Below, one piece after another: positions 6,500 through 60,565 of a stretch of DNA of 64,000 nucleotides. The stretch is taken from assembly GCF_006345805.1 (NCBI RefSeq), contig NC_043026.1:8618001-8682000 (forward strand), read 5' to 3'. Numbering within the stretch: position 1 is the stretch's first letter; every line of letters starts with the position of its first letter. The notes below the pieces were generated by a model that searched no databases, had not been told where the DNA came from, and saw only the letters and a list, made by a program, of their open reading frames with translations. Both the position numbers and the translations under genes were made by a program. This DNA comes from Octopus sinensis (lineage: Eukaryota).

Positions 6500-7750
6500 T
6501 CAGTGGTATCGTTTCTCCCCGGTATGAACACGTTTGTGAGAAGTTAAGTTGTTACGCTGAGTGAACGACCTTCCGCAGATATCACAAGGATATGGCTTCT
6601 CTCCTGTATGGATACGTTTGTGTGTAGTCAAGTAACTACTTCTGGAGAACAATTTGCCACAGATATCACAGCGATAGGGCTTCTCACCTGTATGAAATCG
6701 CCTGTGCCTAGTTAAGTCACTGCTTTGAGAGAATGATTTGTCACAAATATCACAATGATATGGCATTTCTCCTGTATGAATAAGTTTGTGTTTACCAAAG
6801 TTACTACTATGAGAAAATGATTTACCACAGATGTTACACTGATATGGCTTCTCTCCTGTATGGATATATTTGTGTTCAGCTAAGTTACAACTCACGGTGA
6901 ATGATTTACCACAGATATCACAGTGATATGGCTTCTCTCCTGTATGGAAACGTTTGTGAGAAGCTAAGTTGCCACTTTGAGAGAATGATTTACCACAGAT
7001 ATCACAAGGATATGGTGTCTCTCCTGTATGAGTACGTTTGTGATTAGTTAGGGTACTACTGACAGAGAAAGATTTGTTACAGACATCACACTGATATGGC
7101 TTCTCTCCTGTATGAATACGTTTATGAGAAGTTAAAGCACTGTTGTCAGAAAATGATTTACCACAGATATTACAGGAATATGGTGTCTCTCCTGTGTGAA
7201 TACGTTTGTGAGAAGTTAAAGCACTACTTTGAGAGAATGATTTACTGCAGATGTTACACTGATATGGCTTCTCTCCTGTATGAACACGTTTGTGAGAATT
7301 TAAAGCACTTCGGTCAGAGAATGATGTACCACAGACATTGCAGTGAAATGGCTTCTCTCCTGTATGAATACGTTTGTGGGTAGTCAATTTACCACTTTCA
7401 GAGAATGATTTACCACAGATGTCACAGTGAAATGGCTTCTCCCCTGTATGAATACGCTTGTGTTTAGTTAAGTTACTAGTTAAAGAGAATGATTTACCAC
7501 AGACACCACAATGATACGGTTTCTCCCCTGTATGGATATGTCTGTGACTAATTAAGTAACTATTTACAGAAAATGATTTACCACAGATTTCACAGTGAAA
7601 GGGCTTCTCCCCTGTATGAATACGTTTGTGCTTATTCAAGTTACCCTTTTGCGAGAAGGACTTCTTACAAACATCACAGTCATGTGACAATTTCTGTCTC
7701 CCTTTTTCTTCAGGAAAAATCAGTTCCTTTGGATTCTCACTCTTTTCCAT
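6500..7750 (-). CDS. C2H2 zinc-finger protein ZNF1, 416 aa, 14 tandem fingers, no effector domain
   Basis: Uninterrupted ORF of CxxC-x12-HxxxH repeats with TGEKP linkers and a ~22-aa N-terminal leader. Confidence 0.97.
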
Positions 7751-10025: not shown

Positions 10026-10273
10026 TATAATTTTTAAATATATTTGTGCCAAATGTTGAAGAGATATTTTGTGCAATTCAGGTGGAGCAAGGTATTTTTA
10101 TTCAGAAACCCCATCTTTTGGGGGCCTCTTGCTGATATAGTTTGATATGCATGCATGTACTGGTGGCACGTGAAAAAAGATTGGAACGAGGTTGTTGCCA
10201 GTACCGCCTGACTGGCCCTCGTGCCGGTGGGACGCAAATGCAGCCACTACACTCTCAGAGTGGTTGGTGTTAA

Positions 10274-13200
10274 GGAAGGGCATCCAGCTGTAGAAACTCT
10301 GCCAGATCAAGACTGGAGCCTGGTGCAGCCTCTTGTTTGCCAGACCTCAGTCAAATCGTCCAACCCATGCTAGCATTAGGAAGGGCATCCAGCTGTAGAA
10401 ACTCTGCCAGATCAAGACTGGAGCCTGGTGCAGCCATCTGGTTCACCAGACCTCAGTCAAATCGTCCAACCCATGCTAGCATTAGGAAGGGCATCCAGCT
10501 GTAGAAACTCTGCCAGATCAAGACTGGAGCGTGGTGCAGCCATCTGGTTCGCCAGACCTCAGTCAAATCGTCCAACCCATGCTAGCATTAGGAAGGGCAT
10601 CCAGCTGTAGAAACTCTGCCAGATCAAGACTGGAGCCTGGTGCAGCCTCTGGTTTGCCAGACCTCAGTCAAATCGTCCAACACATGCTAGCATTAGGAAG
10701 GGCATCCAGCTATAGAAACTCTGCCAGATCAAGACTGGAGCCTGGTGCAGCCATCTGGTTCACCAGACCTCAGTCAAATCGTCCAACCCATGCTAGCATT
10801 AGGAAGGGCATCCAGCTGTAGAAACTCTGCCAGATCAAGACTGGAGCCTGGTGCAGCTCTGGTTTGCTAGACCTCAGTCAAATCGTCCAACCCATGCTAG
10901 CATTGGGAAGGGCATCCAGCTGTAGAAACTCTGCCAGATCAAGACTGGAGCCTGGTGCAGCCTCTGGTTTGCCAGACCTCAGTCAAATCGTCCAACCCAT
11001 GCTAGCATTGGGAAGGGCATCCAGCTGTAGAAACTCTGCCAGATCAAGACTGGAGCCTGGTGCAGCCTCTGGTTTGCCAGACCTCAGTCAAATCGTCCAA
11101 CCCATGCCAGCATTAGGAAGGGCATCCAGCTGTAGAAACTCTGCCAGATCAAGACTGGAGCCTGGTGCAGCCATCTGGTTCACCAGACCTCAGTCAAATC
11201 GTCCAACCCATGCTAGCATTAGGAAGGGCATCCAGCTGTAGAAACTCTGCCAGATCAAGACTGGAGCCTGGTGCAGCCTCTGGTTTGCCAGACCTCAGTC
11301 AAATCGTCCAACCCATGCTAGCATTGGGAAGGGCATCCAGCTGTAGAAACTCTGCCAGATCAAGACTGGAGCCTGGTGCAGCCTCTGGTTTGCCAGACCT
11401 CAGTCAAATCGTCCAACCCATGCTAGCATTAGGAAGGGCATCCAGCTGTAGAAACTCTGCCAGATCAAGACTGGAGCCTGGTGCAGCCATCTGGTTCACC
11501 AGACCTCAGTCAAATCGTCCAACCCATGCTAGCATTAGGAAGGGCATCCAGCTGTAGAAACTCTGCCAGATCAAGACTGGAGCCTGGTGCAGCCATCTGG
11601 TTCACCAGACCTCAGTCAAATCGTCCAACCCATGCTAGCATTAGGAAGGGCATCCAGCTGTAGAAACTCTGCCAGATCAAGACTGGAGCCTGGTGCAGCC
11701 ATCTGGTTCACCAGACCTCAGTCAAATCGTCCAACCCATGCTAGCATTAGGAAGGGCATCCAGCTGTAGAAACTCTGCCAGATCAAGACTGGAGCGTGGT
11801 GCAGCCATCTGGTTCGCCAGACCTCAGTCAAATCGTCCAACCCATGCTAGCATTAGGAAGGGCATCCAGCTGTAGAAACTCTGCCAGATCAAGACTGGAG
11901 CCTGGTGCAGCTCTGGTTTGCCAGACCTCAGTCAAATCGTCCAACCCATGCTAGCATTAGGAAGGGCATCCAGCTGTAGAAACTCTGCCAGATCAAGACT
12001 GGAGCCTGGTGCAGCCTCTGGTTTGCCAGACCTCAGTCAAATCGTCCAACCCATGCTAGCATTGGGAAGGGCATCCAGCTGTAGAAACTCTGCCAGATCA
12101 AGACTGGAGCCTGGTGCAGCCTCTGGTTTGCCAGACCTCAGTCAAATCGTCCAACCCATGCTAGCATTAGGAAGGGCATCCAGCTGTAGAAACGCTGCCA
12201 GATCAAGACTGGAGCCTGGTGCAGCCATCTGGTTCACCAGACCTCAGTCAAATCGTCCAACCCATGCTAGCATTAGGAAGGGCATCCAGCTGTAGAAACT
12301 CTGCCAGATCAAGACTGGAGCCTGGTGCAGCCTCTGGTTTGCCAGACCTCAGTCAAATCGTCCAACCCATGCTAGCATTAGGAAGGGCATCAAGCTGTAG
12401 AAACTCTGCCAGATCAAGACTGGAGCCTGGTGCAGCCATCTGGTTCACCAGACCTCAGTCAAATCGTCCAACCCATGCTAGCATTAGGAAGGGCATCCAG
12501 CTGTAGAAACTCTGCCAGATCAAGACTGGAGCCTGGTGCAGCAATCTGGTTCACCAGACCTCAGTCAAATCGTCCAACCCATGCTAGCATTAGGAAGGGC
12601 ATCCAGCTGTAGAAACTCTGCCAGATCAAGAATGGAGCCTGGTGCAGCCTCTGGTTTGCCAGACCTCAGTCAAATCGTCCAACCCATGCTAGCATTAGGA
12701 AGGGCATCCAGCTGTAGAAACTCTGCCAGATCAAGACTGGAGCCTGGTGCAGCCATCTGGTTCACCAGACCTCAATCAAATCGTCCAACCCATGCTAGCA
12801 TTAGGAAGGGCATCCAGCTGTAGAAACTCTGCCAGATCAAGACTGGAGCCTGGTGCAGCCTCTGGTTTGCCAGACCTCAGTCAAATCGTCCAACCCATGC
12901 TAGCATTAGGAAGGGCATCCAGCTGTAGAAACTCTGCCAGATCAAGACTGGAGCCTGGTGCAGCTTCTGGTTCACCAGACCTCAGTCAAATCGTCCAACC
13001 CATGCTAGCATTAGGAAGGGCATCCAGCTGTAGAAACTCTGCCAGATCAAGACTGGAGCCTGGTGCAGCCATCTGGTTCCCCAGACCTCAGTCAAATCGT
13101 CCAACCCATGCTAGCATTAGGAAGGGCATCCAGCTGTAGAAACTCTGCCAGATCAAGACTGGAGCCTAGTGCAGCCTCTGGTTTGCCAGACCTCAGTCAA

Positions 13201-16170
13201 ATCGTCCATCCCATGCTAGCATAAGAAGGGCATCCAGCTGTAGAAACTCTGCCAGATCAAGACTGGAGCCTGGTGCAGCCTCTGGTTTGCCAGACCTCAG
13301 TCAAATCGTCCAACCCATGCAAGCATTAGGAAGGGCATCCAGCTGTAGAAACTCTGCCAGATCAAGACTGGAGCCTGGTGCAGCCTCTGGTTTGCCAGAC
13401 CTCAGTCAAATCGTCCAACCCATGCTAGCATTAGGAAGGGCATCCAGCTGTAGAAACTCTGCCAGATCAAGAATGGAGCCTGGTGCAGCCTCTGGTTTGC
13501 CAGACCTCAGTCAAATCGTCCAACCCATGCTAGCATTAGGAAGGGCATCCAGCTGTAGAAACTCTGCCAGATCAAGACTGGAGCCTGGTGCAGCCATCTG
13601 GTTCACCAGACCTCAATCAAATCGTCCAACCCATGCTAGCATTAGGAAGGGCATCCAGCTGTAGAAACTCTGCCAGATCAAGACTGGAGCCTGGTGCAGC
13701 CTCTGGTTTGCCAGACCTCAGTCAAATCGTCCAACCCATGCTAGCATTAGGAAGGGCATCCAGCTGTAGAAACTCTGCCAGATCAAGACTGGAGCCTGGT
13801 GCAGCTTCTGGTTCACCAGACCTCAGTCAAATCGTCCAACCCATGCTAGCATTAGGAAGGGCATCCAGCTGTAGAAACTCTGCCAGATCAAGACTGGAGC
13901 CTGGTGCAGCCATCTGGTTCCCCAGACCTCAGTCAAATCGTCCAACCCATGCTAGCATTAGGAAGGGCATCCAGCTGTAGAAACTCTGCCAGATCAAGAC
14001 TGGAGCCTAGTGCAGCCTCTGGTTGCCAGACCTCAGTCAAATCGTCCATCCCATGCTAGCATAAGAAGGGCATCCAGCTGTAGAAACTCTGCCAGATCAA
14101 GACTGGAGCCTGGTGCAGCCTCTGGTTTGCCAGACCTCAGTCAAATCGTCCAACCCATGCAAGCATTAGGAAGGGCATCCAGCTGTAGAAACTCTGCCAG
14201 ATCAAGACTGGAGCCTGGTGCAGCCTCTGGTTTGCCAGACCTCAGTCAAATCGTCCAACCCATGCTAGCATTAGGAAGGGCATCCAGCTGTAGAAACTCT
14301 GCCAGATCAAGACTGGAGCCTGGTGCAGCCTCTGGTTCACCAGACCTCAGTCAAATCGTCCAACCCATGCTAGCATTAGGAAGGGCATCCAGCTGTAGAA
14401 ACTCTGCCAGATCAAGACTGGAGCCTGGTGCAGCCATCTGGTTCCCAGACCTCAGTCAAATCGTCCAACCCATGCTAGCATTAGGAAGGGCATCCAGCTG
14501 TAGAAACTCTGCCAGATCAAGACTGGAGCCTGGTGCAGCCTCTGGTATGCCAGACCTCAGTCAAATCGTCCACCCATGCTAGCATTAGGAAGGGCATCCA
14601 GCTGTAGAAACTCTGCCAGATCAAGACTGGAGCCTGGTGCAGCCATCTGGTTCACCAGACCTCAGTCAAATCGTCCAACCCATGCTAGCATTAGGAAGGG
14701 CATCCAGCTGTAGAAACTCTGCCAGATCAAGACTGGAGCCTGGTGCAGCCATCTGGTTCACCAGACCTCAGTCAAATCGTCCAACCCATGCTAGCATTAG
14801 GAAGGGCATCCAGCTGTAGAAACTCTGCCAGATCAAGACTGGAGCCTGGTGCAGCCATCTGGTTCACCAGACCTCAGTCAAATCGTCCAACCCAGGCTAG
14901 CATTAGGAAGGGCATCCAGCTGTAGAAACTCTGCCAGATCAAGACTGGAGCCTGGTGCAGCCATCTGGTTCACCAGACCTCAGTCAAATCGTCCAACCCA
15001 TGCTAGCATTAGGAAGGGCATCCAGCTGTAGAAACTCTGCCAGATCAAGACTGGAGCCTGGTGCAGCCATCTGGTTCACCAGACCTCAGTCAAATCGTCC
15101 AACCCAGGCTAGCATTAGGAAGGGCATCCAGCTGTAGAAACTCTGCCAGATCAAGACTGGAGCCTGGTGCAGCCATCTGGTTCACCAGACCTCAGTCAAA
15201 TCGTCCATCCCAGGCTAGCATTAGGAAGGGCATCCAGCTGTAGAAACTCTGCCAGATCAAGACTGGAGCCTTGCAGCCATCTGGTTCACCAGACCTCAGT
15301 CAAATCGTCCAACCCATGCTAGCATTAGGAAGGGCATCCAGCTGTAGAAACTCTGCCAGATCAAGACTGGAGCCTGGTGCAGCCATCTGGTTCCCCAGAC
15401 CTCAGTCAAATCGTCCAACCCATGCTAGCATTAGGAAGGGCATCCAGCTGTAGAAACTCTGCCAGATCAAGACTGGAGCCTGGTGCAGCCATCTGGTTCA
15501 CCAGACCTCAGTCAAATCGCCCAACCCATGCTAGCATTAGGAAGGGCATCCAGCTGTAGAAACTCTGCCAGATCAAGACTGGAGCCTGGTGCAGCCATCT
15601 GGTTCCCCAGACCTCAGTCAAATCGTCCAACCCATGCTAGCATTAGGAAGGGCATCCAGCTGTAGAAACTCTGCCAGATCAAGACTGGAGCCTGGTGCAG
15701 CCTCTGGTTTGCCAGACCTCAGTCAAATCGTCCAACCCATGCTAGCATTAGGAAGGGCATCCATCTGTAGAAACTCTGCCAGATCAAGACTGGAGCCTGG
15801 TGCAGCCATCTGGTTCACCAGACCTCAGTCAAATCGTCCAACCCATGCTAGCATTAGGAAGGGCATCCAGCTGTAGAAACTCTGCCAGATCAAGACTGGA
15901 GCCTGGTGCAGCCATCTGGTTCCCAGACCTCAGTCAAATCGTCCAACCCATGCTAGCATTAGGAAGGGCATCCAGCTGTAGAAACTCTGCCAGATCAAGA
16001 CTGGAGCCTGGTGCAGCCTCTGGTTTGCCAGACCTCAGTCAAATCGTCCAACCCATGCTAGCATTAGGAAGGGCATCCAGCTGTAGAAACTCTGCCAGAT
16101 CAAGACTGGAGCCTGGTGCAGCCATCTGGTTCCCCAGACCTCAGTCAAATCGTCCAACCCATGCTAGCAT
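10274..16170 (+). repeat. Tandem satellite, ~56 units of 105/106 bp, amplified inside a (GAT)n-tailed retroelement 3' end (family D)
   Basis: Unit GGCATCCAGCTGTAGAAACTCTGCCAGATCAAGACTGGAGCCTGGTGCAGCC(A)TCTGGTT..CCAGACCTCAGTCAAATCGTCCAACCCATGCTAGCATTAGGAAG. The element's 5' part precedes the array (~10140) and GGAAAGTGGACTCTAAAC(GAT)n follows it (16171-16206). Confidence 0.97.
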
Positions 16171-22131: not shown

Positions 22132-24126
22132 TCATGTATGAATACACTTGTGAGAAGTTAAGGAACTACTTTGAGAGAATGATTTACCACAGATTTTACA
22201 GGGATATGGCTTCTCTCCTGTATGAACACCCTTGTGACTATGTAAAGTACTACTCTGACAAAATGACTTACCACAGATATCGCAGTGATACGGCTTCTCC
22301 CCTGTATGAATACGCTTGTGACTATTTAAAGCACAACTCTGAGAGAATGATTTACTACAGATATTACACTGATATGGCTTCTCCCCTGTATGAATACGTT
22401 TATGGGTGGTTAGATTACTACTGGCAGCAAAAGATTTGTCACACATGTCACACTGATATGGCTTCTCTCCTGTATGAATACGTTTATGATCAGTCAAAGC
22501 AGTGCTGCGAGGGAATGATTTACCACAGATATTACAGGAATATGGTTTCTCTCCTGTATGAATACGCTTGTGAAAATTTAAATAACCTTGTTCACTGAAA
22601 AATTTACTACAGATGTTACACTGATATGGCTTCTCTCCTGTATGGGAACGTTTGTGACGACCAAAATCACTCTGGTCAGAGAAGGAGTTACCACAGACAT
22701 CACAGTGAAATGGCTTCTCTCCAGTATGAATACGTTTGTGGTTAGACAACTTACCACTTCCAGAGAATGATTTACCACAAATGTCACACCGAAATGGCTT
22801 CTCCCCTGTATGAACACGTACGTGTGCATTTAAAGCACTTCGATTAGAGAATGATTTACTACAGATCTCACAGTGATAGGGCTTCTCTCCAGTATGAACA
22901 CGTCTGTGTCTAGTCATGGAAGTATTTGTGGAGAACAGTTTACCACAGATATCACAGTTGTATGGCTTCTCTCCTGTATGGAAACGTTTGTGTTCAGATA
23001 AGTCAGATCTCACAGAGAATGATTTACCACAGGTACCACAGTGATAGGGCCTCTCTCCCGTATGAATACGCTTGTGCGTAGCTAAGGTGCCACCGCGAGA
23101 GAATGATTTACCACAGATATCGCAAGAATACGGTCTCTCCCCTGTATGTGTACGTTTGTGAGCAGACAGGGTACCACTTCGAGAGAAATATTTATCACAG
23201 ACATCACAGTGAAATGGCTTCTCTCCTGTATGGATATATTTATGCATAGCTAAGTTGTCTTTGCGGGAGAAGGATTTTCCACAGACATCACAAGAATATG
23301 GTGTCTCTCCTGTATGAGTACGCTTGTGATTAGTAAGGCCAGTACAAGCAGAGAAAGATTTGTTACAGATGTCACACTTATATGGTTTCTCTCCTGTATG
23401 AATGCGCTTGTGTATAGTCAAAGCACTGCAGCCAGTAAATGAATTACCACAGATATTACAAGAATATGGTTTCTCTCCTGTATGAATACGTTTGTGAAAA
23501 TTTAAAGTACTTCGGTTAGAGAATGATTTACTGCAGAGGTCACACTGATATGGCTTCTCTCCTGTATGAACACGTTTGTGAGAATTTAAGTCACTTCGCT
23601 GAGAGAATGATTTACCACAGACTTCACAGTGATAAGGCTTCTCCCCTGTATGAATACGTCGGTGTATAGTCACGTAAATTTTTTTAGAGAATGATTTACC
23701 ACAGATGTCACAGTCAAATGGCTTCTCCCCTGTATGAACACGTTTGTGTGTAATCAAGAAAAACTTCCTAGAGAATGATTTACCACAGATGTCACAGTGA
23801 AATGGCTTCTCCTTTGCATGAACACGTTGGTGTGTAGTGAAGTTAATTTTTTTAGAGAATGAATCTCCACAGACGTTACAATGAAATGACTTCTTCTGTG
23901 TATGAATACGCTGGTGTGTAGTCAAGCTAATTTTTTTAGAGAATGATTTTCCACAGGTGTCACAGTGAAATGGCGTCTCCCCTGTATGAACACGTTTGTG
24001 CATATTTAAGTGACTCTTTTGTGAGAAAGACTTTTTACAGACATCACAGTCATGTGACAATTTCCGTCTCCCTTTTTCACTATCTTCTACTAAAGTCAGA
24101 TCCTTTTGTTTTCCAATCTTTGCCAT
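22132..24126 (-). CDS. C2H2 zinc-finger protein ZNF2, 664 aa, 23 tandem fingers
   Basis: Uninterrupted ORF with TGEKP-type linkers and a short leader homologous to that of ZNF1. Confidence 0.97.
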
Positions 24127-32340: not shown

Positions 32341-32428
32341 ATATATATATATGTGTGTGTGTGTATACGTATACATACATGATATATATATATATAAATC
32401 ATGTTGTTGTTTCTTCTATCTGTTATAC

Positions 32429-32468
<40 letters not shown>

Positions 32469-32590
32469 GTATGTATATATATATATGTGTATGTATATAT
32501 ATATATATGTATGTATATATATATATACACACATATATATATATATATATACACACATATATATATATATATATACATACACATTTTATT
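32341..32590. repeat. Compound (TA)n/(TG)n/(CA)n microsatellite
   Basis: Directly visible; source of the YIYIY ORFs. Confidence 0.95.
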
Positions 32591-32921: not shown

Positions 32922-35900
32922 TTATTTCTCATAATAAAAGAAAGCAAAAGATTGACGTCCAGGAATAATTCCAAAAACCATCAAAGAATTGTCTGAAACA
33001 TCCAAACCAAGAACTTCAAAGACTTCATTATCAATATTCCTCAGAAGTAAATATTTTGGATTATCTTTTAATCCCAGGATTTCATCGTCTTCAGATGTTT
33101 CCTCTTCAATATGTCGAGGTATTTCGTAAATATTGTTTCTTCTATCTGTTATATAAACACATTCACCAATTATGGTTAAATGAGGTCTTGGAATATAATA
33201 ATCCAGACCATAAAATATACTTCCTTCTATTCTTAGCCTCCTCACCAACAAATTTTCCCTGAACCATTCCACAAAACACAAATCATTCCACAATTCAAAC
33301 TCCTTCTTCCACTCCCTCCTCACAACAACAACATCACCAAAAGATGTGACTCCTACATCATCCACCCCTTCATCTCCCTCAAACCTTCCACATCTCCTTA
33401 TCTTCCCACGACACACTTCATCTTTACATTTCCCATCTTTGATATCAACCACATCCACATAATAAGGGTCAAAGAGGGCGGGGTCTTTGCAATAAAAGTA
33501 ATACTTGTTGTTCATCCATTTTCTTTGGTATTTCTTGTGTCTCTCTTCTTGAGTTATGTCTCTAATATAATGACCACCACACACGAGTTGATTGTCGTTG
33601 TATTTATAAATCCTGTTGTAGTATTTCTCAGTTCTGATGGTTTTTAAACGACAGAGATCCCTGTTGAAGACCCTCATTTCTCTCCCAAAGGCGACAATGA
33701 AACATTCATCTGTCCACCGACATATGTCCAATGGTGGTCGTTGTTGTTGTTGTTCATATTGAAGTATGTCAACTGTTGTTGTTGTTCTGATTAATGTGAC
33801 ACTTTCTCGAAATATCAACACACTCACATTCTCATCTAACTTAATTAGTTTACTGTTCCAATCCCTAATGTCCTTAAAATCATAATTAACGGGTTCCTCG
33901 AATGCAGGAATGGAAAAAGGGACCATTGCTGTCCTATATGGAAGTCTCCTCACTGATATTTCATCAATTCCTGAATTATTAATCTCCGCTATGTAATTAC
34001 CACATCTCACCTTTAATCTACCTTTACCAATAATTTCACCTGATTTACCTCTTCTTCTTCCTCCTCCATCTCCATCTCCTCCTCTGTATTCCAATTTATT
34101 AATTAATTCATTACTGAATATTTCCTTGTTTGTTTCAGATGTAATGGAAGGGAAACGAAGACCAGAATCAAGATTTAATAACGACACAGATTCCAGAATG
34201 TTCACTTGGTCCCCATCAATCTTTATGCAATGACATTCAATCAATTCAATATGTACACACCAGTAAATACCCGCCACTTTTCTCCATATTACACCATAAG
34301 GGATGAGACTCGGCCAAACTTTAGATGTCTGCAAATCTTCTCCATTCAGTTGGAATATTTCTTTCCTTTTAGGAACCGTGGCCATTATGTGTGATTTTTG
34401 TGTAAAACACACACCACCAACTAAACTTGCAACATTTCTGTGACATAGCAACTGGCCGTCTTCATCAAATATCTTAACATTTCCATTATTGGTTTTTTCA
34501 CACACAACTGTCTTTCCTTCCTCAGAGACATCAAAATCTTTTACTTGAACAGGACATTTGTCTGTTTGTAAACGAGCAACCGGGAAGCTGTCTCGATTCA
34601 CCATAAACAACCCTTCAACATACAATTCATTTCTTCTTCCCTTCCTGGGGCTTCCAACAAACCTTGGTCCTTTATAGTTTATACTGAAGAATTCTACTTC
34701 ATCTTTATAAATTCTTTCATTTAAAAATATTCTCTTGTATTCCCCATTCTGGGTCAAACACAAAATGCTATTATATCCAGAGAAAGCTAAATATTTTTCC
34801 CATCGACCACAAATGTACAAAAAACTGTCATCAATTGTCATATTGTCTTCACCAAAATAATACTTCATGTAGTGACTGACTGAATGTAAATATTGACCAC
34901 CACTGTTGAAGAAAATTATGAATCTTTCGTTTAAGACAATGATGACATCTTCATCAGTAACTTTAATATCCTTGATGTCATCAGAATAATTTCCATCTTC
35001 TTTTCTCATTATTAATGGTTCAGGTATCTTTATTTGTTTTATTTCCTTCACACTCGTATGTATTTCATCAATATCAACAAAATGCAAATGTCTTTCATCT
35101 TCCCATTCACTCAAAACCAGTTGATTATTTGATAAAGAAGCCACACATTTATAATTAGTTCTCGTTTTGTAAATTATCAACGACAAGGGAAATTCCACTT
35201 TTAATGTCAATAGCTGGGATTTATTATCAAAACGATCCTTATTCGTAATGACCAGTGTGTTTGACTGCCATCGACACATTTTAATAAATCCATTAACATT
35301 CCATTTGATTGAATCCAAAAGTTGACCATCCAATGTGAATATCTTAATGTTTTTATTCCACTCATCACAACCTGCAATCAGACTATTTTCAGTAAGAACC
35401 AAATAATTAATCCCCACTGGTTCTTTGTCCCCCAAATGTTGAGGGAGAGGAATATGTCTGGCTTTATCAGAAACTGTCAGGTCCTGTAGATATAAAGTGG
35501 AAGACAACATTTCACTGAGAGAAATGTTTCTAGAAAATACATCCACCAGGTCGATATAATAATTAAGTTGATTATTAGTAACGAGATCATTAACCAACAA
35601 ATTCTGATCGTTTATGGCAAACATACGGCTTCTGTCTATCAGATAAACAGACGTTTGGTCAATAGATCCACCTTGGAGATTGGGGAGACGTTTCACTTGG
35701 GACATTAAAACACTGGGGACCATCTGACGACCGCCATGGCCACCACCGCTAATGTGCTTGAAGAAAGCTTCTGTTTCGGACTCTGAATCACTGGATACCA
35801 TGTCAATACTACTAATACTACCATCACTGCCACCACTCTGACAACATGCCCTGCCATGACTACCACTACCTATTGTAGTGTTGTATTGAATAGCTTTTCC

Positions 35901-38441
35901 CCTAGTAACAATTAATAGCTTTTCTGTTTTCTTGTCTATTGATAATGATTTCACAAAAACAGGGATATTAATTGTCTTAATTACTTCGACTTGATTATAA
36001 TAATTGATGACTAAAATATCTAAATGTGATGGTTTATCACAATAACAAACAATTTCACATTCACCCATCTTACACACCCGTACATAAGGCTGCCTTAATG
36101 ACACACTTCTCACTGTCTTTGACAGGTTTCCGATGACCCTTAATTGTTTCTGTAGGGGTAATGTGACCCCTATATGATTTGAATCCCATCGACATATATC
36201 TGTGGCTGTAGACGGCAGAGATAATCTGGACACAATGTCTCCTTCCTGAGAAATGTATAACAAGCAATCATGCTTGATGTCGGAAACCACCAACTGTCCA
36301 TTGGACAGATTACATATTTCGCCAATGACAAGTTTTTGGTCATTCTCCTTTTCTTTGAGTCGTAGATTTAGATTTCTGATATAAGGATTTTTCGTGGGTA
36401 AACGACAGCCAGACGACAGGTCTTGATACTTGTAAAGAAGAACCCTGTTGAGTTGAGTGTCCGGGACATAAAGAGTTCCTTGGAAAACAGCAATGTGAGG
36501 GTGAACAGGGAAAGGCAGTTTCCACTGCCATTTCATTTCTCCATATAGATCGTAACATCTGAGAATAGAGTGTCTCCTGAAGAGGACATAGAAATAAACA
36601 TTATCAGAGTAGATGTGATGAGGGTAGCCATAGAATGGAAGGTATTTTTGAAAAAGTTCTTCACCAAATGTGGAATAAAATACCATTTTATTTTCGTTTC
36701 CATCTACGACGACAAAATTAATTGGAGTTGCAGCAATGCTGACATTATGATGTCCCAGAGAAATTCTTTCTGCAATGTCAACTTTATCTTCGTTGATCAA
36801 GAGGATATGGACCTCACTTTTGTTTTCAGTGGTGGTCACAGCCAGACACTTATTTGATACAATATGACATATTTTCATGTAACCAGTTTGCACCTTTATT
36901 AAAGGGCCTTTTCTTAGTTCAGGACAGGTGATATACTGAAACCCTTTCGTTTCAGGATAAAATACCAGGAATCTGTTTGCGTTTATTCTACAACAGAAAG
37001 AAGGAAGCTCAAGGAAAACTGAATTATTTTGGTTAATTATTTCCCCGTTATCAGTAAATAATTTAGCTTTCTTGTTTTTGTAAATTATTAATATAGAAGA
37101 TGTAGACATAGGTAGAATATTTGTAATGTTGTAGCAATCCTCAATATCAATATAGTCTTTTAAACTGGGGGTATGTAGCTGGTGGTTGTATGACAGTTTG
37201 GGCCAAAAGTCTTTATTCATTTGAATACCATGTGGTTTACCGCAATAATCTGTTACCAAAATGGTATCTTTACCAACAGAAATAGAGCGGCATTTCCTGC
37301 CAATGTCCCTCCTTGTTACACCACCTTTAGCTGAAATCCTATAAATTATTTGTCCCTGAAGGACATAGAAATAATTTTGGTAGAGAGAGATTTTACTTGG
37401 GAGGTGCAGAGAATGGGTCTCTACCTCCCATAACTGTTGGCCATCCAGTTTGTAACAGATTACTCTGTTGATGCTGGCGAATGTAATTACAAGTATATTC
37501 TGGATCCCTACAGCAAGATCTGTTGGGGTTTCTTTGGTAATAAATTGATAGTTTATGGTATTATCCTCCCAATCAAATTGGTAAACAGTCTTACCAAACA
37601 TTTCTACACCTATAAGTGTAGAATCTTCCAAGTAACTCACCATATGTAACCCCAACTGTATCCTTTTGATTTTGAAGGTTTTGGGGCTGATAATAAGAAT
37701 CATTTCTCGGAAGGGGAGGGTTGCCAGAACCATGTCTTCACTGATTCTGGTGAAACTGGTCACAGAAGATGGACAATGGACATCAATTCTGTCACTGTCT
37801 CTTGTTACTAAACTTATTGTCTTACAATGGTGGGAATATGTCATAACTCCCTCCTCTATAATGACAATATTGGATATTATTGTCCTTTCTTCAAATTCTT
37901 CTCCAGATTCCTCAATCTTTGCTTCTCTGGTCACAACTGGCTGAAGCGGCCGAAATTTTGTGGTCACTTTTGGTGGTTCAATGGTCTTGTGGTTGTATGG
38001 GTTACAGGTGACATAAATGTCAAAGAGTCTTTGTTGAAACCAATCAAGGTTTTGGTGAACAAAATCATTATTTTGTTTTGCAAATTCCAGAAATCTTGGC
38101 ATTTTACGTTTGATATTACGTAAAATACGAGATCCATTTAAGCCCAGAGAGTCCATGTGATTACATTTATCCTTTACATAATCTATAAACATATTGATGT
38201 GGTCTGTTTTAATTAGTGTTCGGTAACATCTCACAATATGAAGAAAACTTGGTAACATGGACTTTTCCTGTTCTTTAGATTTCTTTGTGTCTTTTCTTTC
38301 CTGTTCTTCTGTTTTCTTTGTGTTTTGTGTATGTAATATTTGGGGAAGATTTGGTGTAGTTTCCTTATGAATTGGTGTTGTATCACAGACTGTGGCAGGA
38401 ATGAGAGCCAACATTTTGTTTTCTTCATTAATCTTCTCCAT
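32922..38441 (-). CDS. 1839-aa single-coding-exon protein with ~6 tandem NHL/SGL-like beta-propeller modules
   Basis: 5.5-kb stop-free ORF in AT-rich DNA. Beta-strand-rich repeats with a recurring [PT]xxIC(R)Wxxxx(I/V)xVTLP-like motif at aa ~229, 482, 747, 1053, 1342 and 1571. NHL-like blades such as IGEICNLSNGQLVVSDIKHDCLLYI. An in-frame upstream stop supports the ATG. The fold assignment is an inference. Confidence 0.9.
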   Translation of the reverse strand: MEKINEENKMLALIPATVCDTTPIHKETTPNLPQILHTQNTKKTEEQERKDTKKSKEQEKSMLPSFLHIVRCYRTLIKTDHINMFIDYVKDKCNHMDSLGLNGSRILRNIKRKMPRFLEFAKQNNDFVHQNLDWFQQRLFDIYVTCNPYNHKTIEPPKVTTKFRPLQPVVTREAKIEESGEEFEERTIISNIVIIEEGVMTYSHHCKTISLVTRDSDRIDVHCPSSVTSFTRISEDMVLATLPFREMILIISPKTFKIKRIQLGLHMVSYLEDSTLIGVEMFGKTVYQFDWEDNTINYQFITKETPTDLAVGIQNILVITFASINRVICYKLDGQQLWEVETHSLHLPSKISLYQNYFYVLQGQIIYRISAKGGVTRRDIGRKCRSISVGKDTILVTDYCGKPHGIQMNKDFWPKLSYNHQLHTPSLKDYIDIEDCYNITNILPMSTSSILIIYKNKKAKLFTDNGEIINQNNSVFLELPSFCCRINANRFLVFYPETKGFQYITCPELRKGPLIKVQTGYMKICHIVSNKCLAVTTTENKSEVHILLINEDKVDIAERISLGHHNVSIAATPINFVVVDGNENKMVFYSTFGEELFQKYLPFYGYPHHIYSDNVYFYVLFRRHSILRCYDLYGEMKWQWKLPFPVHPHIAVFQGTLYVPDTQLNRVLLYKYQDLSSGCRLPTKNPYIRNLNLRLKEKENDQKLVIGEICNLSNGQLVVSDIKHDCLLYISQEGDIVSRLSLPSTATDICRWDSNHIGVTLPLQKQLRVIGNLSKTVRSVSLRQPYVRVCKMGECEIVCYCDKPSHLDILVINYYNQVEVIKTINIPVFVKSLSIDKKTEKLLIVTRGKAIQYNTTIGSGSHGRACCQSGGSDGSISSIDMVSSDSESETEAFFKHISGGGHGGRQMVPSVLMSQVKRLPNLQGGSIDQTSVYLIDRSRMFAINDQNLLVNDLVTNNQLNYYIDLVDVFSRNISLSEMLSSTLYLQDLTVSDKARHIPLPQHLGDKEPVGINYLVLTENSLIAGCDEWNKNIKIFTLDGQLLDSIKWNVNGFIKMCRWQSNTLVITNKDRFDNKSQLLTLKVEFPLSLIIYKTRTNYKCVASLSNNQLVLSEWEDERHLHFVDIDEIHTSVKEIKQIKIPEPLIMRKEDGNYSDDIKDIKVTDEDVIIVLNERFIIFFNSGGQYLHSVSHYMKYYFGEDNMTIDDSFLYICGRWEKYLAFSGYNSILCLTQNGEYKRIFLNERIYKDEVEFFSINYKGPRFVGSPRKGRRNELYVEGLFMVNRDSFPVARLQTDKCPVQVKDFDVSEEGKTVVCEKTNNGNVKIFDEDGQLLCHRNVASLVGGVCFTQKSHIMATVPKRKEIFQLNGEDLQTSKVWPSLIPYGVIWRKVAGIYWCVHIELIECHCIKIDGDQVNILESVSLLNLDSGLRFPSITSETNKEIFSNELINKLEYRGGDGDGGGRRRGKSGEIIGKGRLKVRCGNYIAEINNSGIDEISVRRLPYRTAMVPFSIPAFEEPVNYDFKDIRDWNSKLIKLDENVSVLIFRESVTLIRTTTTVDILQYEQQQQRPPLDICRWTDECFIVAFGREMRVFNRDLCRLKTIRTEKYYNRIYKYNDNQLVCGGHYIRDITQEERHKKYQRKWMNNKYYFYCKDPALFDPYYVDVVDIKDGKCKDEVCRGKIRRCGRFEGDEGVDDVGVTSFGDVVVVRREWKKEFELWNDLCFVEWFRENLLVRRLRIEGSIFYGLDYYIPRPHLTIIGECVYITDRRNNIYEIPRHIEEETSEDDEILGLKDNPKYLLLRNIDNEVFEVLGLDVSDNSLMVFGIIPGRQSFAFFYYEK

Positions 38442-38580
38442 TTTATTAATATAGAATTATTATCTTTTTCTGTTAAATATATTCTTTTCTGTGGATTTTG
38501 TTTTCTTCCTTTCGAATACAATTTATCTCTTCAAAATTCACTAATTTTTAAAGCAAAGCTGAAATAAAATGAAAACTTTA
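38442..38580 (-). other. 5'UTR and splice acceptor of the propeller-gene terminal exon
   Basis: TTTTCATTTTATTTCAG|CTTTGC, exon start at 38558, 117 nt before the ATG. Confidence 0.6.
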
Positions 38581-51883: not shown

Positions 51884-52210
51884 TTAAAGTGCCAGAACCG
51901 GGGTTGCCGTAAGCATTTCCCCAGTACCTGCCACAACTACCATCTCACTTGGCTTCCTGGGTCTTCTTCTCATTTGATACAATTTAAAGCTGAATAGCTG
52001 GGTGGGTAGAATGCTTCCTACATATATAAACAATGGCTTTCTTTCAGCTTCCATCTACCAAATCCACTCAAAAGGCTTTGGTCAGACTGAGCCTATAGTA
52101 GAAGACACTTGCCCAAGGTGCCACGCAGTGAGACTGAACCCAGAACCATGCAGTTGGGAAGCAAACCTCTGACCAAACAGCCACACTTATTGTTTTAAGA
52201 GTTTTATAAC

Positions 52211-52726
52211 AAAAAAACACCATCCGAGCGTGGCTGTCTGCCAGCCTCGTCTGGCACCTGTGTCGGTGACAAATAAAAAAACACCATCCGAGCGTGGCCG
52301 TCTGCCAGCCTCGTCTGGCACCTGTGTCGGTGGCACATAAAAAAACACCATCCGAGCGTGGCCGTTCGCCAGCCTCGTCTGGCACCTGTGTCGGTGGCAC
52401 ATAAAAAAACACCATCCGAGCGTGGCCGTCTGCCAGCCTCGTCTGGCACCTGTGTCGGTGGCACATAAAAAAACACCATCCGAGCGTGGCCGTTCGCCAG
52501 CCTCGACTGGCACCTGTGTCGGTGGCACATAAAAAAACACCATCCGAGCGTGGCCGTCTGCCAGCCTCGTCTGGCACCTGTGTCGGTGGCACATAAAAAA
52601 ACACCATCCGAGCGTGGCCGTCTGCCAGCCTCGTCTGGCACCTGTGTCGGTGGCACATAAAAAAACACCATCCGAGCGTGGCCGTCTGCCAGCCTCGTCT
52701 GGCACCTGTGTCGGTGGCACATAAAA
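52211..52726 (+). repeat. Tandem array, 8 x 64 bp, amplified inside a family D retroelement 3' end
   Basis: Exact 64-bp period (CACC at 52218, 52282 ... 52666). Continues into the normal family D sequence and a (GAT)n tail at ~52890. Confidence 0.97.
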
Positions 52727-52913
52727 AGCACCCACTACACTCACGGAGTGGTTTGCGTTAGGAAGGGCATCCAGCCGTAGAAACACTGCCAGATCAGACT
52801 GGCCTGGTGCAGCCTTCTGGCTTCCCAGACTCCAGTTGAACCGTCCAACCCATGCTAGCATGGAAAGCGGACGCTAAACGATGATGATGATTCAAAATCT
52901 GGAAGAAATTGCC

Positions 52914-57661: not shown

Positions 57662-58027
<366 letters not shown>

Positions 58028-58087
58028 TTAAACCAGTATTGCCAGAGAGTGATTTACCGAAGATGCTACAGGAATACGGTATCTTAT

Positions 58088-59206: not shown

Positions 59207-60565
59207 TTATGGACCCTCCCCTGTATGAATACATCTATGAGAATTTAAAACACTCCTCCGATAGAATGATTTACTACAGACGTTACACTGATATGGCTTC
59301 TCTCCTGTATGAACACGTTTGTGACGTTTTAAAATACTTTGGTGAGAGAATGATGTACCGCAGATATCACAGTGATAAGGCTTCTCTCCTGTATGAGTAC
59401 GTTTGTGGGTAATCAAGTTACTACTTTGAGGGAATGATTTACCACAGATGTCACAGTGAAATGGCTTCTCCCCTGTATGGAGACGCTTGTGTGTAGTCAA
59501 GCTACTGGCTGAAAAGAATGATTTACCACAGATATCACAGTGATATGGTTTCTCTCCTGTATGGAAACGTTTGTGAATAAGTAAGCTGTTATGTCGAGAG
59601 AATGATTTACCACAGATATCACAATAATATGGTGTCTCTCCAGTATGAATACGTTTGTGGTTATTTAGGGTATTATTTTCAGAGAAAGATTTACCACAGA
59701 TGTTGCAGTGATATGGCTTCTCTCCTGTATGGATACGTTTATGAGAAGTTAAAGCACTCCTCTGAGAGAATGATTTATTACAAATGTTACACTGATACGG
59801 CTTCTCTCCTGTATGAATACGTTTGTGACGATTTAAAACACTTCGATCAGAAAATGATGCACCGCAGACATCACAGTGATATGGCTTCTCTCCTGTATGA
59901 ATACGTTTGTGTAGAGTCAGGTTATATTTTCGAGGGAAGGAGTTACCACAAATGTCACAGTGAAATGGCTTCTCCCCTGTATGAACACGTATGTGATAAT
60001 TTAAGGTACTTTGGTCAGAGAATGATTTACTACAGACATCACAATGATAGGGCTTCTCCCCTGTATGAATACGTTTGTGCTTATTTAAGTAACCCTTTTG
60101 AGAGAAGGACTTTTTACAGACATCACAGTCATATGACAATTTTCTTCCTTTTTCTCTTTCTTCAGGGGAAAAATGAATGGATTTATGAGAAGTTAAAGTA
60201 CCACGTTGAGAGAATGATTTACTACAGACATTACACTGATATGGCTTCTCTCCTGTATGAACACGTTTGTGACAATTTAAAGCACTTCGGTGAGAAAATG
60301 ATTTACCACAAATATCACAGTGATACGGCTTCTCTCCCGTATGGGTGGGTTTGTGTTCAGTTAAGTCATTACTTCGACAGAATGATTTACCACAGATTCC
60401 ACAGTGAAAGGGCTTCTCTCCTCTATGAATACGTTTGTGCATATTCAAGTTACCCTTTCGAGAGAAAGACTTTTTACACACATCACAGTCATGTGACAAT
60501 TTTTGTCTCTCTTTTTTGCTATCTTCTGGAAAAATATGTTCCTTTAGATTCTCACTCTTTTCCAT
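59207..60565 (-). CDS. C2H2 zinc-finger protein ZNF4, 452 aa, 15 fingers, chimeric (second leader after finger 4)
   Basis: Intact ORF. Internal [28 protein letters not shown] resembles the ZNF1 N-terminus [27 protein letters not shown]. Confidence 0.93.
   Translation of the reverse strand: MEKSENLKEHIFPEDSKKERQKLSHDCDVCKKSFSRKGNLNMHKRIHRGEKPFHCGICGKSFCRSNDLTEHKPTHTGEKPYHCDICGKSFSHRSALNCHKRVHTGEKPYQCNVCSKSFSQRGTLTSHKSIHFSPEEREKGRKLSYDCDVCKKSFSQKGYLNKHKRIHTGEKPYHCDVCSKSFSDQSTLNYHIRVHTGEKPFHCDICGNSFPRKYNLTLHKRIHTGEKPYHCDVCGASFSDRSVLNRHKRIHTGEKPYQCNICNKSFSQRSALTSHKRIHTGEKPYHCNICGKSFSENNTLNNHKRIHTGETPYYCDICGKSFSRHNSLLIHKRFHTGEKPYHCDICGKSFFSASSLTTHKRLHTGEKPFHCDICGKSFPQSSNLITHKRTHTGEKPYHCDICGTSFSHQSILKRHKRVHTGEKPYQCNVCSKSFYRRSVLNSHRCIHTGEGP

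What the first reader, a model, noticed from the sequence alone, without database searches (positions are those of the whole stretch)
32922..38441. Giant single-exon multi-propeller protein embedded in a ZNF cluster
Seen: a 1839-aa stop-free ORF with one motif recurring at ~230-305 aa spacing (aa ~229, 482, 747, 1053, 1342, 1571), two Gly/Ser-rich insertions, and a short helical N-terminus with no RING/B-box Cys pattern. Known: single NHL-like propellers cap the expanded molluscan TRIM-like proteins. Inference: this is a six-propeller scaffold or sensor with no recognisable effector, intact while neighbouring ZNFs and transposons decay. It has the same layout as the ZNF genes (5'UTR acceptor, one coding exon, minus strand). 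I cannot assign it to a named family.
Basis: partly seen in the sequence, partly recalled or inferred. Interest (0 to 1): 0.8.

Follow-up and report, generated by a model that had tools for sequence, protein, structure and literature searches.

The report
Octopus giant six-propeller protein gene
This is a real, intact octopus gene for a giant intracellular protein built from six NHL-type beta-propellers in a row, a member of an uncharacterised octopod-only family in which one face of the fourth propeller changes rapidly between gene copies, as expected of a surface that recognises varying targets.

Summary
The 1839-codon minus-strand ORF (32922-38441) is exactly as described and cannot be chance (P~1e-63). 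It belongs to an uncharacterised family found only in octopods (Octopus vulgaris/sinensis/bimaculoides, Argonauta hians). All members examined have one uninterrupted coding exon. AlphaFold models give four of them (M1, M2, M4, M6) as confident 23-24-strand, six-bladed propellers; M3 and M5 are low-confidence. An exhaustive HMM search of 1.84 billion proteins found, outside the family, only molluscan RING/B-box+NHL proteins. Every module matches their propeller (hhalign 94-99%). No RING, B-box, enzyme, transposon domain, signal peptide or TM segment is present. Pairwise dN/dS is 0.40-0.67. On the window gene's own branch the conserved modules have omega ~0.19, so this copy is functional. Between recent paralogs M4 and M6 evolve at omega ~1-4, and in M4 variability sits on alternate loops, meaning one propeller face (p=1e-7; M1/M2 controls show no such pattern). 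The family shows birth-and-death turnover: tandem copies, frameshifted pseudogenes, and a 2-bp frameshift in the O. vulgaris ortholog. Best reading: an intracellular multivalent recognition scaffold with a diversifying binding face. The function is inferred, and expression was not tested.

The parts
32922..38441 (-). Complete single-exon ORF, 1839 codons plus stop
   Evidence: Chance probability ~1e-63. Pairwise dN/dS to paralogs 0.43-0.67.
37875..38441 (-). N-terminal region aa 1-189: disordered lysine/glutamate-rich start, helical domain aa 55-146, then the conserved 'KFRPL' linker. Variable among paralogs.
   Evidence: Helices. Entropy 0.86. No Pfam hit. No similarity to TRIM N-termini.
37158..37874 (-). 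Propeller module M1 (aa 190-428), 23 predicted strands
   Evidence: pLDDT 61-88. hhalign to molluscan NHL propellers 7e-11.
36372..37157 (-). Propeller module M2 (aa 429-690), 24 predicted strands, conserved among paralogs
   Evidence: 1.6e-10; entropy 0.25.
35472..36371 (-). Module M3 (aa 691-990). Low-confidence beta structure interrupted by the Gly/Ser-rich insert. Highly conserved. Carries the 'ATDICRWD' motif.
   Evidence: pLDDT mostly below 65, below 50 over aa 673-781 and from 856. hhalign to NHL propellers 2.7e-18. Entropy 0.17.
35724..35870 (-). Gly/Ser/acidic-rich disordered insertion (aa ~858-906), variable in length and composition among paralogs
   Evidence: (pLDDT<50).
34602..35471 (-). 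Propeller module M4 (aa 991-1280), 24 strands. Hypervariable on one face between recent paralogs.
   Evidence: Omega 1.1-2.1. Odd loops entropy 1.03 vs even loops 0.20, p=1.3e-7. Omega of the odd loops 1.3-2.5.
33912..34601 (-). Module M5 (aa 1281-1510). Poorly modelled, but the most conserved module among close paralogs. Contains the Gly/Arg-rich insert aa 1453-1469 (34035-34085).
   Evidence: pLDDT<50. Homologous to M4 at 1.4e-5 and to NHL propellers at 8e-8. Entropy 0.10. Insert.
32925..33911 (-). Propeller module M6 (aa 1511-1839), 24 strands with long hairpins. Its C-terminal half (aa ~1640-1760, window 33162-33524) is a second variability hot spot.
   Evidence: hhalign to NHL propellers 2.4e-8, independent of the search query. 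Omega 1.0-3.9. Entropy profile.
38559..38575 (-). Polypyrimidine tract plus AG, a candidate 3' splice site of a 5'UTR intron ~120 nt upstream of the ATG
   Evidence: conserved in L001-L003, but so is the surrounding flank. No transcript evidence.

Best explanation
Shown: the ORF is a functional protein-coding gene of an octopod-restricted family with an intronless coding region. It encodes a soluble protein with no signal peptide or TM segment. The layout is a variable helical N-terminal domain followed by six tandem, mutually homologous modules of the six-bladed NHL-type beta-propeller kind. These are most closely related to the single propeller of molluscan RING/B-box-NHL (TRIM-like) proteins, but no RING, B-box or other effector is detectable. 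Inferred: it acts as an intracellular multivalent binding platform. The strongly conserved propellers (M2, M3, M5) would maintain a common architecture or bind a common partner. One face of propeller 4 would be the specificity-determining surface that diversifies between gene copies; by analogy with NHL loop topology this is the 'top', ligand-binding face. Part of propeller 6 and the N-terminal helices also vary. The family grows and shrinks by tandem or segmental duplication, gene conversion and pseudogenisation within ZNF-rich chromosome regions. This is the dynamics typical of recognition repertoires such as immune, restriction-factor or self/non-self systems. The ligand (protein, RNA or other) is unknown.
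For: Real gene: the ORF is improbable by chance. Eleven full-length single-ORF homolog loci were fetched from four species. Pairwise omega is 0.40-0.67 with hundreds of substitutions. Ortholog pairs give omega 0.39-0.40. On the window's own terminal branch the conserved modules have omega ~0.19 (15 nonsynonymous, 21 synonymous). Distant paralogs retain similarity only in the CDS. Fold: searches give 23-24 strands per module, and Foldseek E reaches 1.5e-19 to tandem or triple propeller proteins. Sub-threshold Pfam hits are all propeller families. NHL ancestry: with TRIM71 and Thin NHL among the only three weak PDB sequence hits. Soluble and intracellular. Diversifying surface: M4+M6 against the rest gives Fisher p=7e-6, 9e-4 and 3e-10. 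The L002-L003 comparison gives omega 2.1 for M4 and 3.9 for M6, combined one-sided p=0.001. All three independent terminal branches show omega 2.4-3.8-fold higher in M4+M6. In M4 all 12 odd loops are variable and all 11 even loops conserved (p=1.3e-7), with no such pattern in M1 or M2. Omega of the variable-face loops is 2.5, 1.3 and 2.5. Birth-and-death: L004 holds three copies in 43 kb, one with at least three frameshifts. The O. vulgaris ortholog has a frameshift. Many models are fragmentary or gapped. M1 of L003 is a mosaic.
Against: There is no expression or protein evidence. M3 and M5 are poorly modelled, so 'six propellers' rests on homology for two of them. Omega>1 is only nominally significant, the hot modules were chosen post hoc, and no single branch is significant. 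Relaxed constraint on longer loops could contribute, although the M1/M2 controls argue against a generic effect. The M6 hot spot shows no face pattern. Old ortholog pairs show no M4 excess, so diversification is confined to the recent burst. The top-face assignment comes from loop motifs and was not read from coordinates. No ligand clue exists: module charges are near neutral.
Confidence: 0.55

Rival explanations
1. It is a conserved structural or assembly scaffold, like DDB1, IFT-A or EML-type multi-propeller proteins. The elevated rates in M4 and M6 would be relaxed constraint after duplication, on the way to pseudogenisation, and would not reflect selection for new specificities.
For: Best Foldseek matches are scaffold proteins. 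Omega in M4+M6 is ~0.7-1.4 per branch and not significantly above 1. Many copies are decaying. Ortholog pairs show uniform constraint.
Against: Variability in M4 is confined to one face, with strands and opposite loops still constrained. Equally long loops in M2 are invariant in the same paralog set. The L002-L003 path gives omega 2-4. A dosage-sensitive scaffold would not be expected in dozens of tandem copies.
Confidence: 0.22
2. It is a multivalent RNA-binding post-transcriptional regulator that uses its NHL propellers as Brat, LIN-41/TRIM71 and Mei-P26 do.
For: There is homology to NHL propellers of TRIM-like proteins, and TRIM71 and Thin NHL are the only recognisable PDB sequence hints. 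From established knowledge, NHL top surfaces bind RNA in Brat and LIN-41.
Against: No module is basic; net charges range from -8 to +4. Pfam NHL is not reached in this protein. Nothing tested here bears on RNA binding.
Confidence: 0.1
3. It is a partner or cofactor of the co-clustered octopus C2H2 zinc-finger proteins, functionally analogous to the TRIM28/KAP1-KZNF pairing, and co-amplified with them.
For: The expanded subfamily lies in ZNF-rich regions. It descends from TRIM-like proteins. One gene model fuses ZNFs with a family member (P0006).
Against: Linkage is not universal: four of the eight other expanded-clade loci examined, both divergent conserved members and the Argonauta gene have no ZNF array within 10 kb. 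The fusion model is probably annotation read-through. Co-location can simply reflect duplication-prone DNA.
Confidence: 0.06
4. It is the protein of an unrecognised mobile element, or a non-functional ORF preserved by recent duplication.
For: It is multi-copy and intronless, lies among transposon debris (RT fragment at 448-1416), and has many broken copies.
Against: There are no RT, integrase, transposase or helicase domains. Paralog homology ends raggedly, 0.2-1.2 kb beyond the ORF, at different points in different copies, and distant copies share only the CDS. Omega is significantly below 1, and orthologs are retained 1:1:1 across three Octopus species.
Confidence: 0.03

Closest known systems
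Molluscan TRIM-like RING/B-box + NHL propeller proteins, and TRIM-NHL proteins generally (TRIM2/3/32/71, Brat, Thin)
   Same: The propeller modules are homologous. The only non-family hits in 1.84 billion proteins are such proteins from Sepia, Mytilus and Potamilus, and each module aligns to their propeller at 94-99% probability. Both have six-bladed, four-stranded blades, and both are intracellular.
   Different: No RING, no B-box, and no detectable TRIM coiled-coil. Six propellers in tandem where those proteins have one. The Pfam NHL model is not reached in this protein. A single ~5.5-kb coding exon. Restricted to octopods.
Multi-propeller scaffolds: DDB1/CPSF160 (three propellers), IFT-A WDR19/IFT140, UTP21, EML (TAPE) proteins, LRP4-6 (YWTD propellers)
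   Same: Tandem propeller architecture. These are the best structural matches, with Foldseek E from 1e-19 to 1e-10.
   Different: Only 7-11% identity, with no sequence or profile relationship. Most are seven-bladed WD40-type proteins, and the LRPs are extracellular with EGF spacers. They are single-copy, conserved housekeeping genes, unlike this tandemly expanding, fast-evolving family.
Hypervariable beta-propeller recognition repertoires, e.g. fungal NACHT-WD40 (HET-E/D/R, NWD) genes; also TRIM5alpha-type restriction factors with variable-loop surfaces (from my own knowledge, not tested here)
   Same: It works like them in pattern: paralog families with birth-and-death turnover, exchange between copies, and amino-acid diversification concentrated on one face or loop set of a binding domain.
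   Different: No NACHT/NB-ARC or RING effector domain. No evidence here of repeat-unit shuffling. The propeller type differs (NHL vs WD40, or SPRY in TRIM5). The biological role is untested.

Membership tests
NHL-repeat six-bladed beta-propeller superfamily | Six blades of four antiparallel strands, ~40-50 aa per blade | tested here: met
   M1 has 23 strands; M2, M4 and M6 have 24 strands each at pLDDT ~70-90. M3 and M5 are low-confidence and inferred only by homology to the other modules.
NHL-repeat six-bladed beta-propeller superfamily | Match to Pfam NHL (PF01436) at or above the gathering score | tested here: not met
   No NHL hit for the window protein even at E<=10. The divergent member P0047 reaches 18.5 bits against a cut-off of 20.
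NHL-repeat six-bladed beta-propeller superfamily | Profile-level homology to bona fide NHL-domain proteins | tested here: met
   hhalign of each module against an alignment of proteins that themselves carry Pfam NHL hits (P0066 29.1, P0067 30.2, P0069 36.1 bits) gives E from 2.7e-18 to 8e-8 and probability 94.5-99%. The N-domain control gives E 0.55. M6 was not part of the query that retrieved those proteins.
TRIM (tripartite motif) proteins | N-terminal RING finger | tested here: not met
   No RING Pfam hit. Only 4 Cys in aa 1-189.
TRIM (tripartite motif) proteins | B-box zinc finger(s) | tested here: not met
   No B-box hit in this protein or in any of the 21 members scanned.
TRIM (tripartite motif) proteins | Coiled-coil following the B-box | tested here: inconclusive
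   A helical region at aa 55-146 exists, but it shows no profile similarity to the N-terminal regions of the TRIM-like relatives (E>=0.07).
Transposable-element-encoded protein | Catalytic domain (RT, integrase, transposase, Rep/helicase) | tested here: not met
   No such Pfam hits. The fold is all-beta propeller plus a short helical domain.
Transposable-element-encoded protein | Copies share defined termini beyond the ORF | tested here: not met
   Flank homology ends at different positions in L002 and L003 and is absent in L005-L008.
WD40-type multi-propeller scaffolds (DDB1/IFT/UTP21/EML) | WD40 or family-specific sequence signature | tested here: not met
   Only fold-level Foldseek similarity at 7-11% identity. 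Pfam WD40-related hits are sub-threshold and sporadic.

The most novel reading that the evidence does not exclude
Octopods possess a previously unrecognised kind of germline-encoded intracellular recognition repertoire. It would consist of giant proteins with six NHL propellers and no effector domain, descended from TRIM-NHL proteins. One propeller face is diversified between tandemly duplicated copies under positive selection, and the family is co-amplified with the lineage-specific C2H2 zinc-finger clusters. It could serve against viruses or transposons, or in self/non-self or neural recognition.
Probability: 0.22. Interest if true: 0.8.

Novelty: new variant of a known kind. Interest (0 to 1): 0.62.

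Why it matters
Cephalopod genomes are known for lineage-specific expansions (C2H2 ZNFs, protocadherins, GPCRs). This adds an unannotated family, with dozens of copies labelled only 'uncharacterized' and no literature found. To my knowledge its architecture, six NHL-type propellers in one polypeptide with no RING or B-box, has not been described. The one-face diversification of a single propeller gives a concrete, testable hypothesis about where specificity resides. It offers a possible entry point into invertebrate intracellular recognition systems in an animal group that lacks adaptive immunity. It also shows how TRIM-NHL propellers can be redeployed without the ubiquitin-ligase part.

Tried and rejected
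- **BLASTP self-comparison:** no internal repeats at E<=10. The repeats are visible only at profile level.
- **Pfam, and PDB by sequence, on the single protein:** nothing significant. The PDB profile search gave only non-significant TRIM71 and Thin NHL hits.
- **Word-seeded homolog searches:** only Octopus proteins. The exhaustive search was needed to reach Argonauta and the TRIM-NHL tail.
- **Literature searches by gene ID and keywords:** nothing on this family.
- **N-terminal domain against TRIM N-terminal regions:** no similarity.
- **Loop-parity analysis of M6:** no face pattern.
- **Independent dN/dS replicate with P0014/P0016:** failed, because P0016's coding exon lies outside the fetched locus.
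- **Ortholog-only dN/dS (window vs O. vulgaris):** too few substitutions (46) to be informative.
- **Rfam:** no hits in the window.
- **Transposon and pseudogene readings:** rejected.
- **RNA-binding reading:** not supported by charge, but not excluded.
Full report
**Observation**

The window contains a single uninterrupted ORF on the minus strand at 32922-38441: ATG, 1839 codons, stop. Given the base composition of the region, the chance of no stop codon over that length is about 1e-63. The other five frames of the same stretch carry 76-184 stops.

'CRW' occurs exactly at aa 750, 1056 and 1574, and looser versions lie near aa 229, 482 and 1342. Two Gly/Ser- or Gly/Arg-rich stretches (aa ~858-906 and 1453-1469) are present. 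The N-terminus has few cysteines.

C2H2 zinc-finger ORFs lie on the same strand at 6.5-7.7, 22.1-24.1, 54.5-55.6, 58.2-58.8 and 59.2-60.6 kb. A retrotransposon RT/RNase H fragment lies at 448-1416.

**Source**

An O. vulgaris chromosome (OX597841.1, 22.16-22.19 Mb; locus L001) is colinear with the window at ~97.6% identity over more than 25 kb. The window therefore comes from the Octopus vulgaris/sinensis complex.

**Internal repeats**

BLASTP sees no self-similarity. A family profile compared with itself does, for example aa 694-1042 vs 1002-1332 at E=1.9e-5.

I cut the family alignment into an N-terminal region and six modules:

| Part | Residues |
|---|---|
| N-terminal region | aa 1-189 |
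| M1 | aa 190-428 |
| M2 | aa 429-690 |
| M3 | aa 691-990 |
| M4 | aa 991-1280 |
| M5 | aa 1281-1510 |
| M6 | aa 1511-1839 |

Module-module hhalign E-values form a connected graph:

| Pair | E-value |
|---|---|
| M3-M6 | 1.3e-6 |
| M4-M5 | 1.4e-5 |
| M4-M6 | 2.1e-5 |
| M3-M4 | 1.6e-4 |
| M2-M4 | 4e-4 |
| M1-M2 | 7e-4 |
| M1-M3 | 1.7e-3 |

The N-terminal region gives E>=0.24 against every module.

**Fold**

AlphaFold2 on two overlapping halves used 21-sequence family alignments.

- **N-terminal region:** helices at aa 55-146.
- **M1:** 23 strands, confidently modelled (pLDDT ~70-90).
- **M2, M4 and M6:** 24 strands each, also confidently modelled. This is the count expected for six four-stranded blades.
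- **M3 and M5:** poorly modelled.
- **Gly-rich insertions:** disordered.

Foldseek against the PDB returns only tandem or triple propeller proteins, at 7-11% identity. Examples are IFT-A subunits (E=1.5e-19), UTP21, DDB1, EML-type microtubule inner proteins and LRP4. This confirms the fold class but not a family.

There is no hydrophobic segment compatible with a signal peptide or TM helix.

**Family and ancestry**

Two word-seeded searches found ~40 proteins, all annotated 'uncharacterized' and all from O. vulgaris, O. sinensis or O. bimaculoides. Many lie on one 29-Mb O. vulgaris chromosome.

An exhaustive HMM search with a 1160-position profile (aa 180-1379) against 1.84 billion representatives found only 36 proteins at E<=1e-3.

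- **Strong hits:** family members. These include two Argonauta hians proteins and two divergent lineages with 1:1:1 orthologs in the three Octopus species.
- **Weak tail (E 1e-5 to 8e-4):** mostly molluscan proteins with RING, B-box and/or NHL Pfam domains. They include proteins from Sepia pharaonis, Potamilus streckersoni and Mytilus edulis; the other representatives looked up carry no name or organism.

Each of the six modules aligns to the propeller of those tail proteins at hhalign probability 94.5-99% (E 2.7e-18 to 8e-8). This includes M6, which was not part of the query. The N-terminal control gives E=0.55.

The Pfam NHL model itself is not reached by this protein. No RING, B-box or other effector domain is found in it or in any member scanned.

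I therefore file the modules as divergent NHL-type propellers. The protein is not a TRIM.

**Is it a gene?**

All eleven full-length homolog loci fetched, including the Argonauta gene, are single uninterrupted ORFs of 5.0-5.7 kb.

- Pairwise Nei-Gojobori omega is 0.40-0.67 over dS 0.08-0.86.
- Two ortholog pairs give omega 0.39 and 0.40.
- Between close paralogs, nucleotide similarity runs 0.2-1.2 kb beyond the ORF and ends at different places in different copies. Between distant paralogs only the CDS is alignable. This argues against a mobile element and for selection on the coding sequence.
- With substitutions polarised by an outgroup paralog, the window gene's own branch has 15 nonsynonymous and 21 synonymous changes in N, M2, M3 and M5, giving omega ~0.19. 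This particular copy has been under purifying selection.

**Turnover**

- The O. vulgaris ortholog differs by 46 substitutions and a 2-bp deletion in a (TC)n run at codon 351. The deletion breaks the frame, and the annotation bridges it with an artificial intron. It could also be an assembly error.
- L004 carries three copies in 43 kb, one of them with at least three frameshifts.
- Many database models are fragments or have internal gaps.
- M1 of L003 has dS 0.74 against ~0.06 for the rest of the gene, which indicates exchange between paralogs.
- A neighbour-joining tree places the window gene in a recent O. vulgaris/sinensis burst. Older Octopus clades, the Argonauta clade and a basal lineage only ~29% identical lie outside it.
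- ZNF arrays lie within 10 kb of several loci of the expanded clade, but not of the divergent members or the Argonauta gene.

**Where the protein changes**

Between recent paralogs, M4 and M6 have omega 1.0-1.16 (window vs L002 and L003) and 2.1 and 3.9 (L002 vs L003). The other modules stay at 0.3-0.5. Fisher tests for heterogeneity give p=7e-6, 9e-4 and 3e-10. For the L002-L003 path, a one-sided test of omega>1 gives p=0.039 (M4), 0.007 (M6) and 0.001 combined.

Because these pairs share branches, I also assigned changes to branches. All three terminal branches show higher omega in M4+M6:

| Branch | M4+M6 | Rest |
|---|---|---|
| Window | 0.72 | 0.19 |
| L002 | 1.36 | 0.52 |
| L003 | 1.44 | 0.59 |

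None of the three is individually significantly above 1. Old ortholog pairs show no M4 excess.

Across 22 close paralog proteins, positional entropy is highest in the N-terminal helices, M4 and aa 1640-1760 of M6. It is lowest in M5, M3 and M2.

Within M4 the pattern is sharp. All 12 odd-numbered inter-strand loops are variable (mean entropy 1.03). All 11 even-numbered loops are conserved (mean 0.20; Mann-Whitney p=1.3e-7). In a propeller of four-stranded blades, successive loops alternate between the two faces, so the variability lies on one face.

The same analysis in M1 and M2 shows no odd/even difference, and long loops in M2 are invariant. This is therefore not a generic property of loops.

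Omega within M4:

| M4 element | Omega |
|---|---|
| Variable-face (odd) loops | 2.5, 1.3, 2.5 (p=0.04, 0.28, 0.03) |
| Opposite-face (even) loops | 0.45-0.96 |
| Strands | 0.7-1.7 |

The conserved loops are tight turns of the form 'TLDGQ', 'NSGGQ' and 'LSNNQ'. By my knowledge of the NHL repeat, these correspond to a-b and c-d turns on the bottom face. The variable loops would then form the top, ligand-binding face. This is an inference and was not read from coordinates.

**Mechanism**

Shown:
- It is a functional gene of an octopod-specific family.
- It has six homologous NHL-type modules, four of them confidently modelled as six-bladed propellers.
- It has no detectable effector domain.
- Between recent paralogs, substitution rates are heterogeneous across modules, and in M4 the variation is confined to one face.

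Inferred:
- It is an intracellular multivalent binding platform.
- The conserved propellers provide common architecture or a common partner.
- The M4 face, together with part of M6 and the N-terminal helices, sets copy-specific target recognition.

The dynamics resemble recognition repertoires such as fungal NACHT-WD40 genes or primate TRIM5; this comparison comes from my own knowledge and was not tested here. The ligand is unknown. No module is basic, so RNA binding in the manner of Brat or LIN-41 is possible but unsupported.

Rivals are a plain scaffold with relaxed constraint, an RNA-binding regulator, a ZNF cofactor, and a mobile element or dead ORF. They are weighed in their own sections of this report.

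**Novelty**

The proteins exist in databases only as 'uncharacterized'. I found no paper mentioning them.

The fold and its TRIM-NHL ancestry are known kinds. The combination is new: a six-fold tandem NHL architecture without the tripartite motif, the octopod restriction, and the one-face diversification. I rate it a new variant of a known kind.

**Limits**

- There are no expression data.
- Two modules are poorly modelled.
- The positive-selection evidence is nominal and partly post hoc.
- The taxon range depends on which proteomes are in the libraries.

Noticed in passing
window 10273-16170: A 5.9-kb satellite: a 106-bp unit in 56 copies at 97% identity, with a 316-bp higher-order period. 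GC is ~52% against a ~38% background.
   Followed up: no
window 52211-52727: A 64-bp tandem repeat, 8 copies at 97% identity. It overlaps three nested minus-strand ORFs (52068-52861); the longest (52187-52861) was scanned and has no Pfam hit.
   Followed up: no
L001 (O. vulgaris OX597841.1), codon 351 of the orthologous ORF: A 2-bp deletion in a (TC)n run breaks the frame of the O. vulgaris ortholog. The deposited gene model P0001 hides it with an 'intron' that skips aa 343-503. It could be a real null allele or an assembly error.
   Followed up: partly
proteins P0061 / P0096 (O. vulgaris, named 'MIB2-like'): These gene models join ankyrin repeats and a C3HC4 RING to ~115 aa matching this family. 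The match runs from the 'KFRPL' linker into the first blades of M1, so the N-terminal helical domain is replaced exactly at the domain boundary. This is either a real chimera that links the family to an E3 ligase or an annotation read-through.
   Followed up: partly
L003 (paralog P0003), module M1: Between the window (or L002) and L003, dS is ~0.74 in M1 but ~0.03-0.10 in the rest of the gene. This indicates a mosaic gene produced by gene conversion or recombination between diverged paralogs.
   Followed up: partly
L004 (O. vulgaris OX597841.1, 21.89-21.93 Mb): Three family copies lie within 43 kb: an intact 1803-codon ORF, an oppositely oriented copy with at least three frameshifts, and the start of a third.
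   Followed up: yes
proteins P0006 and P0013: These deposited models fuse a family member with C2H2 zinc fingers (P0006) or with DUF4371/hAT-like domains (P0013). They are probably read-through of neighbouring genes.
   Followed up: no
window 3-1416 and 57679-58029: A retrotransposon RT/RNase H fragment is split over two frames; its RVT_1 match starts at profile position 69. A short ZNF array lies outside any ORF of 150 aa or more. Both are examples of decayed neighbours. By contrast, the ZNF ORFs at 6500-7750, 22132-24126 and 59207-60565 are open.
   Followed up: partly
window 32424-32579: A long (TA)n / (TATG)n microsatellite tract begins ~340 bp downstream of the stop codon.
   Followed up: no
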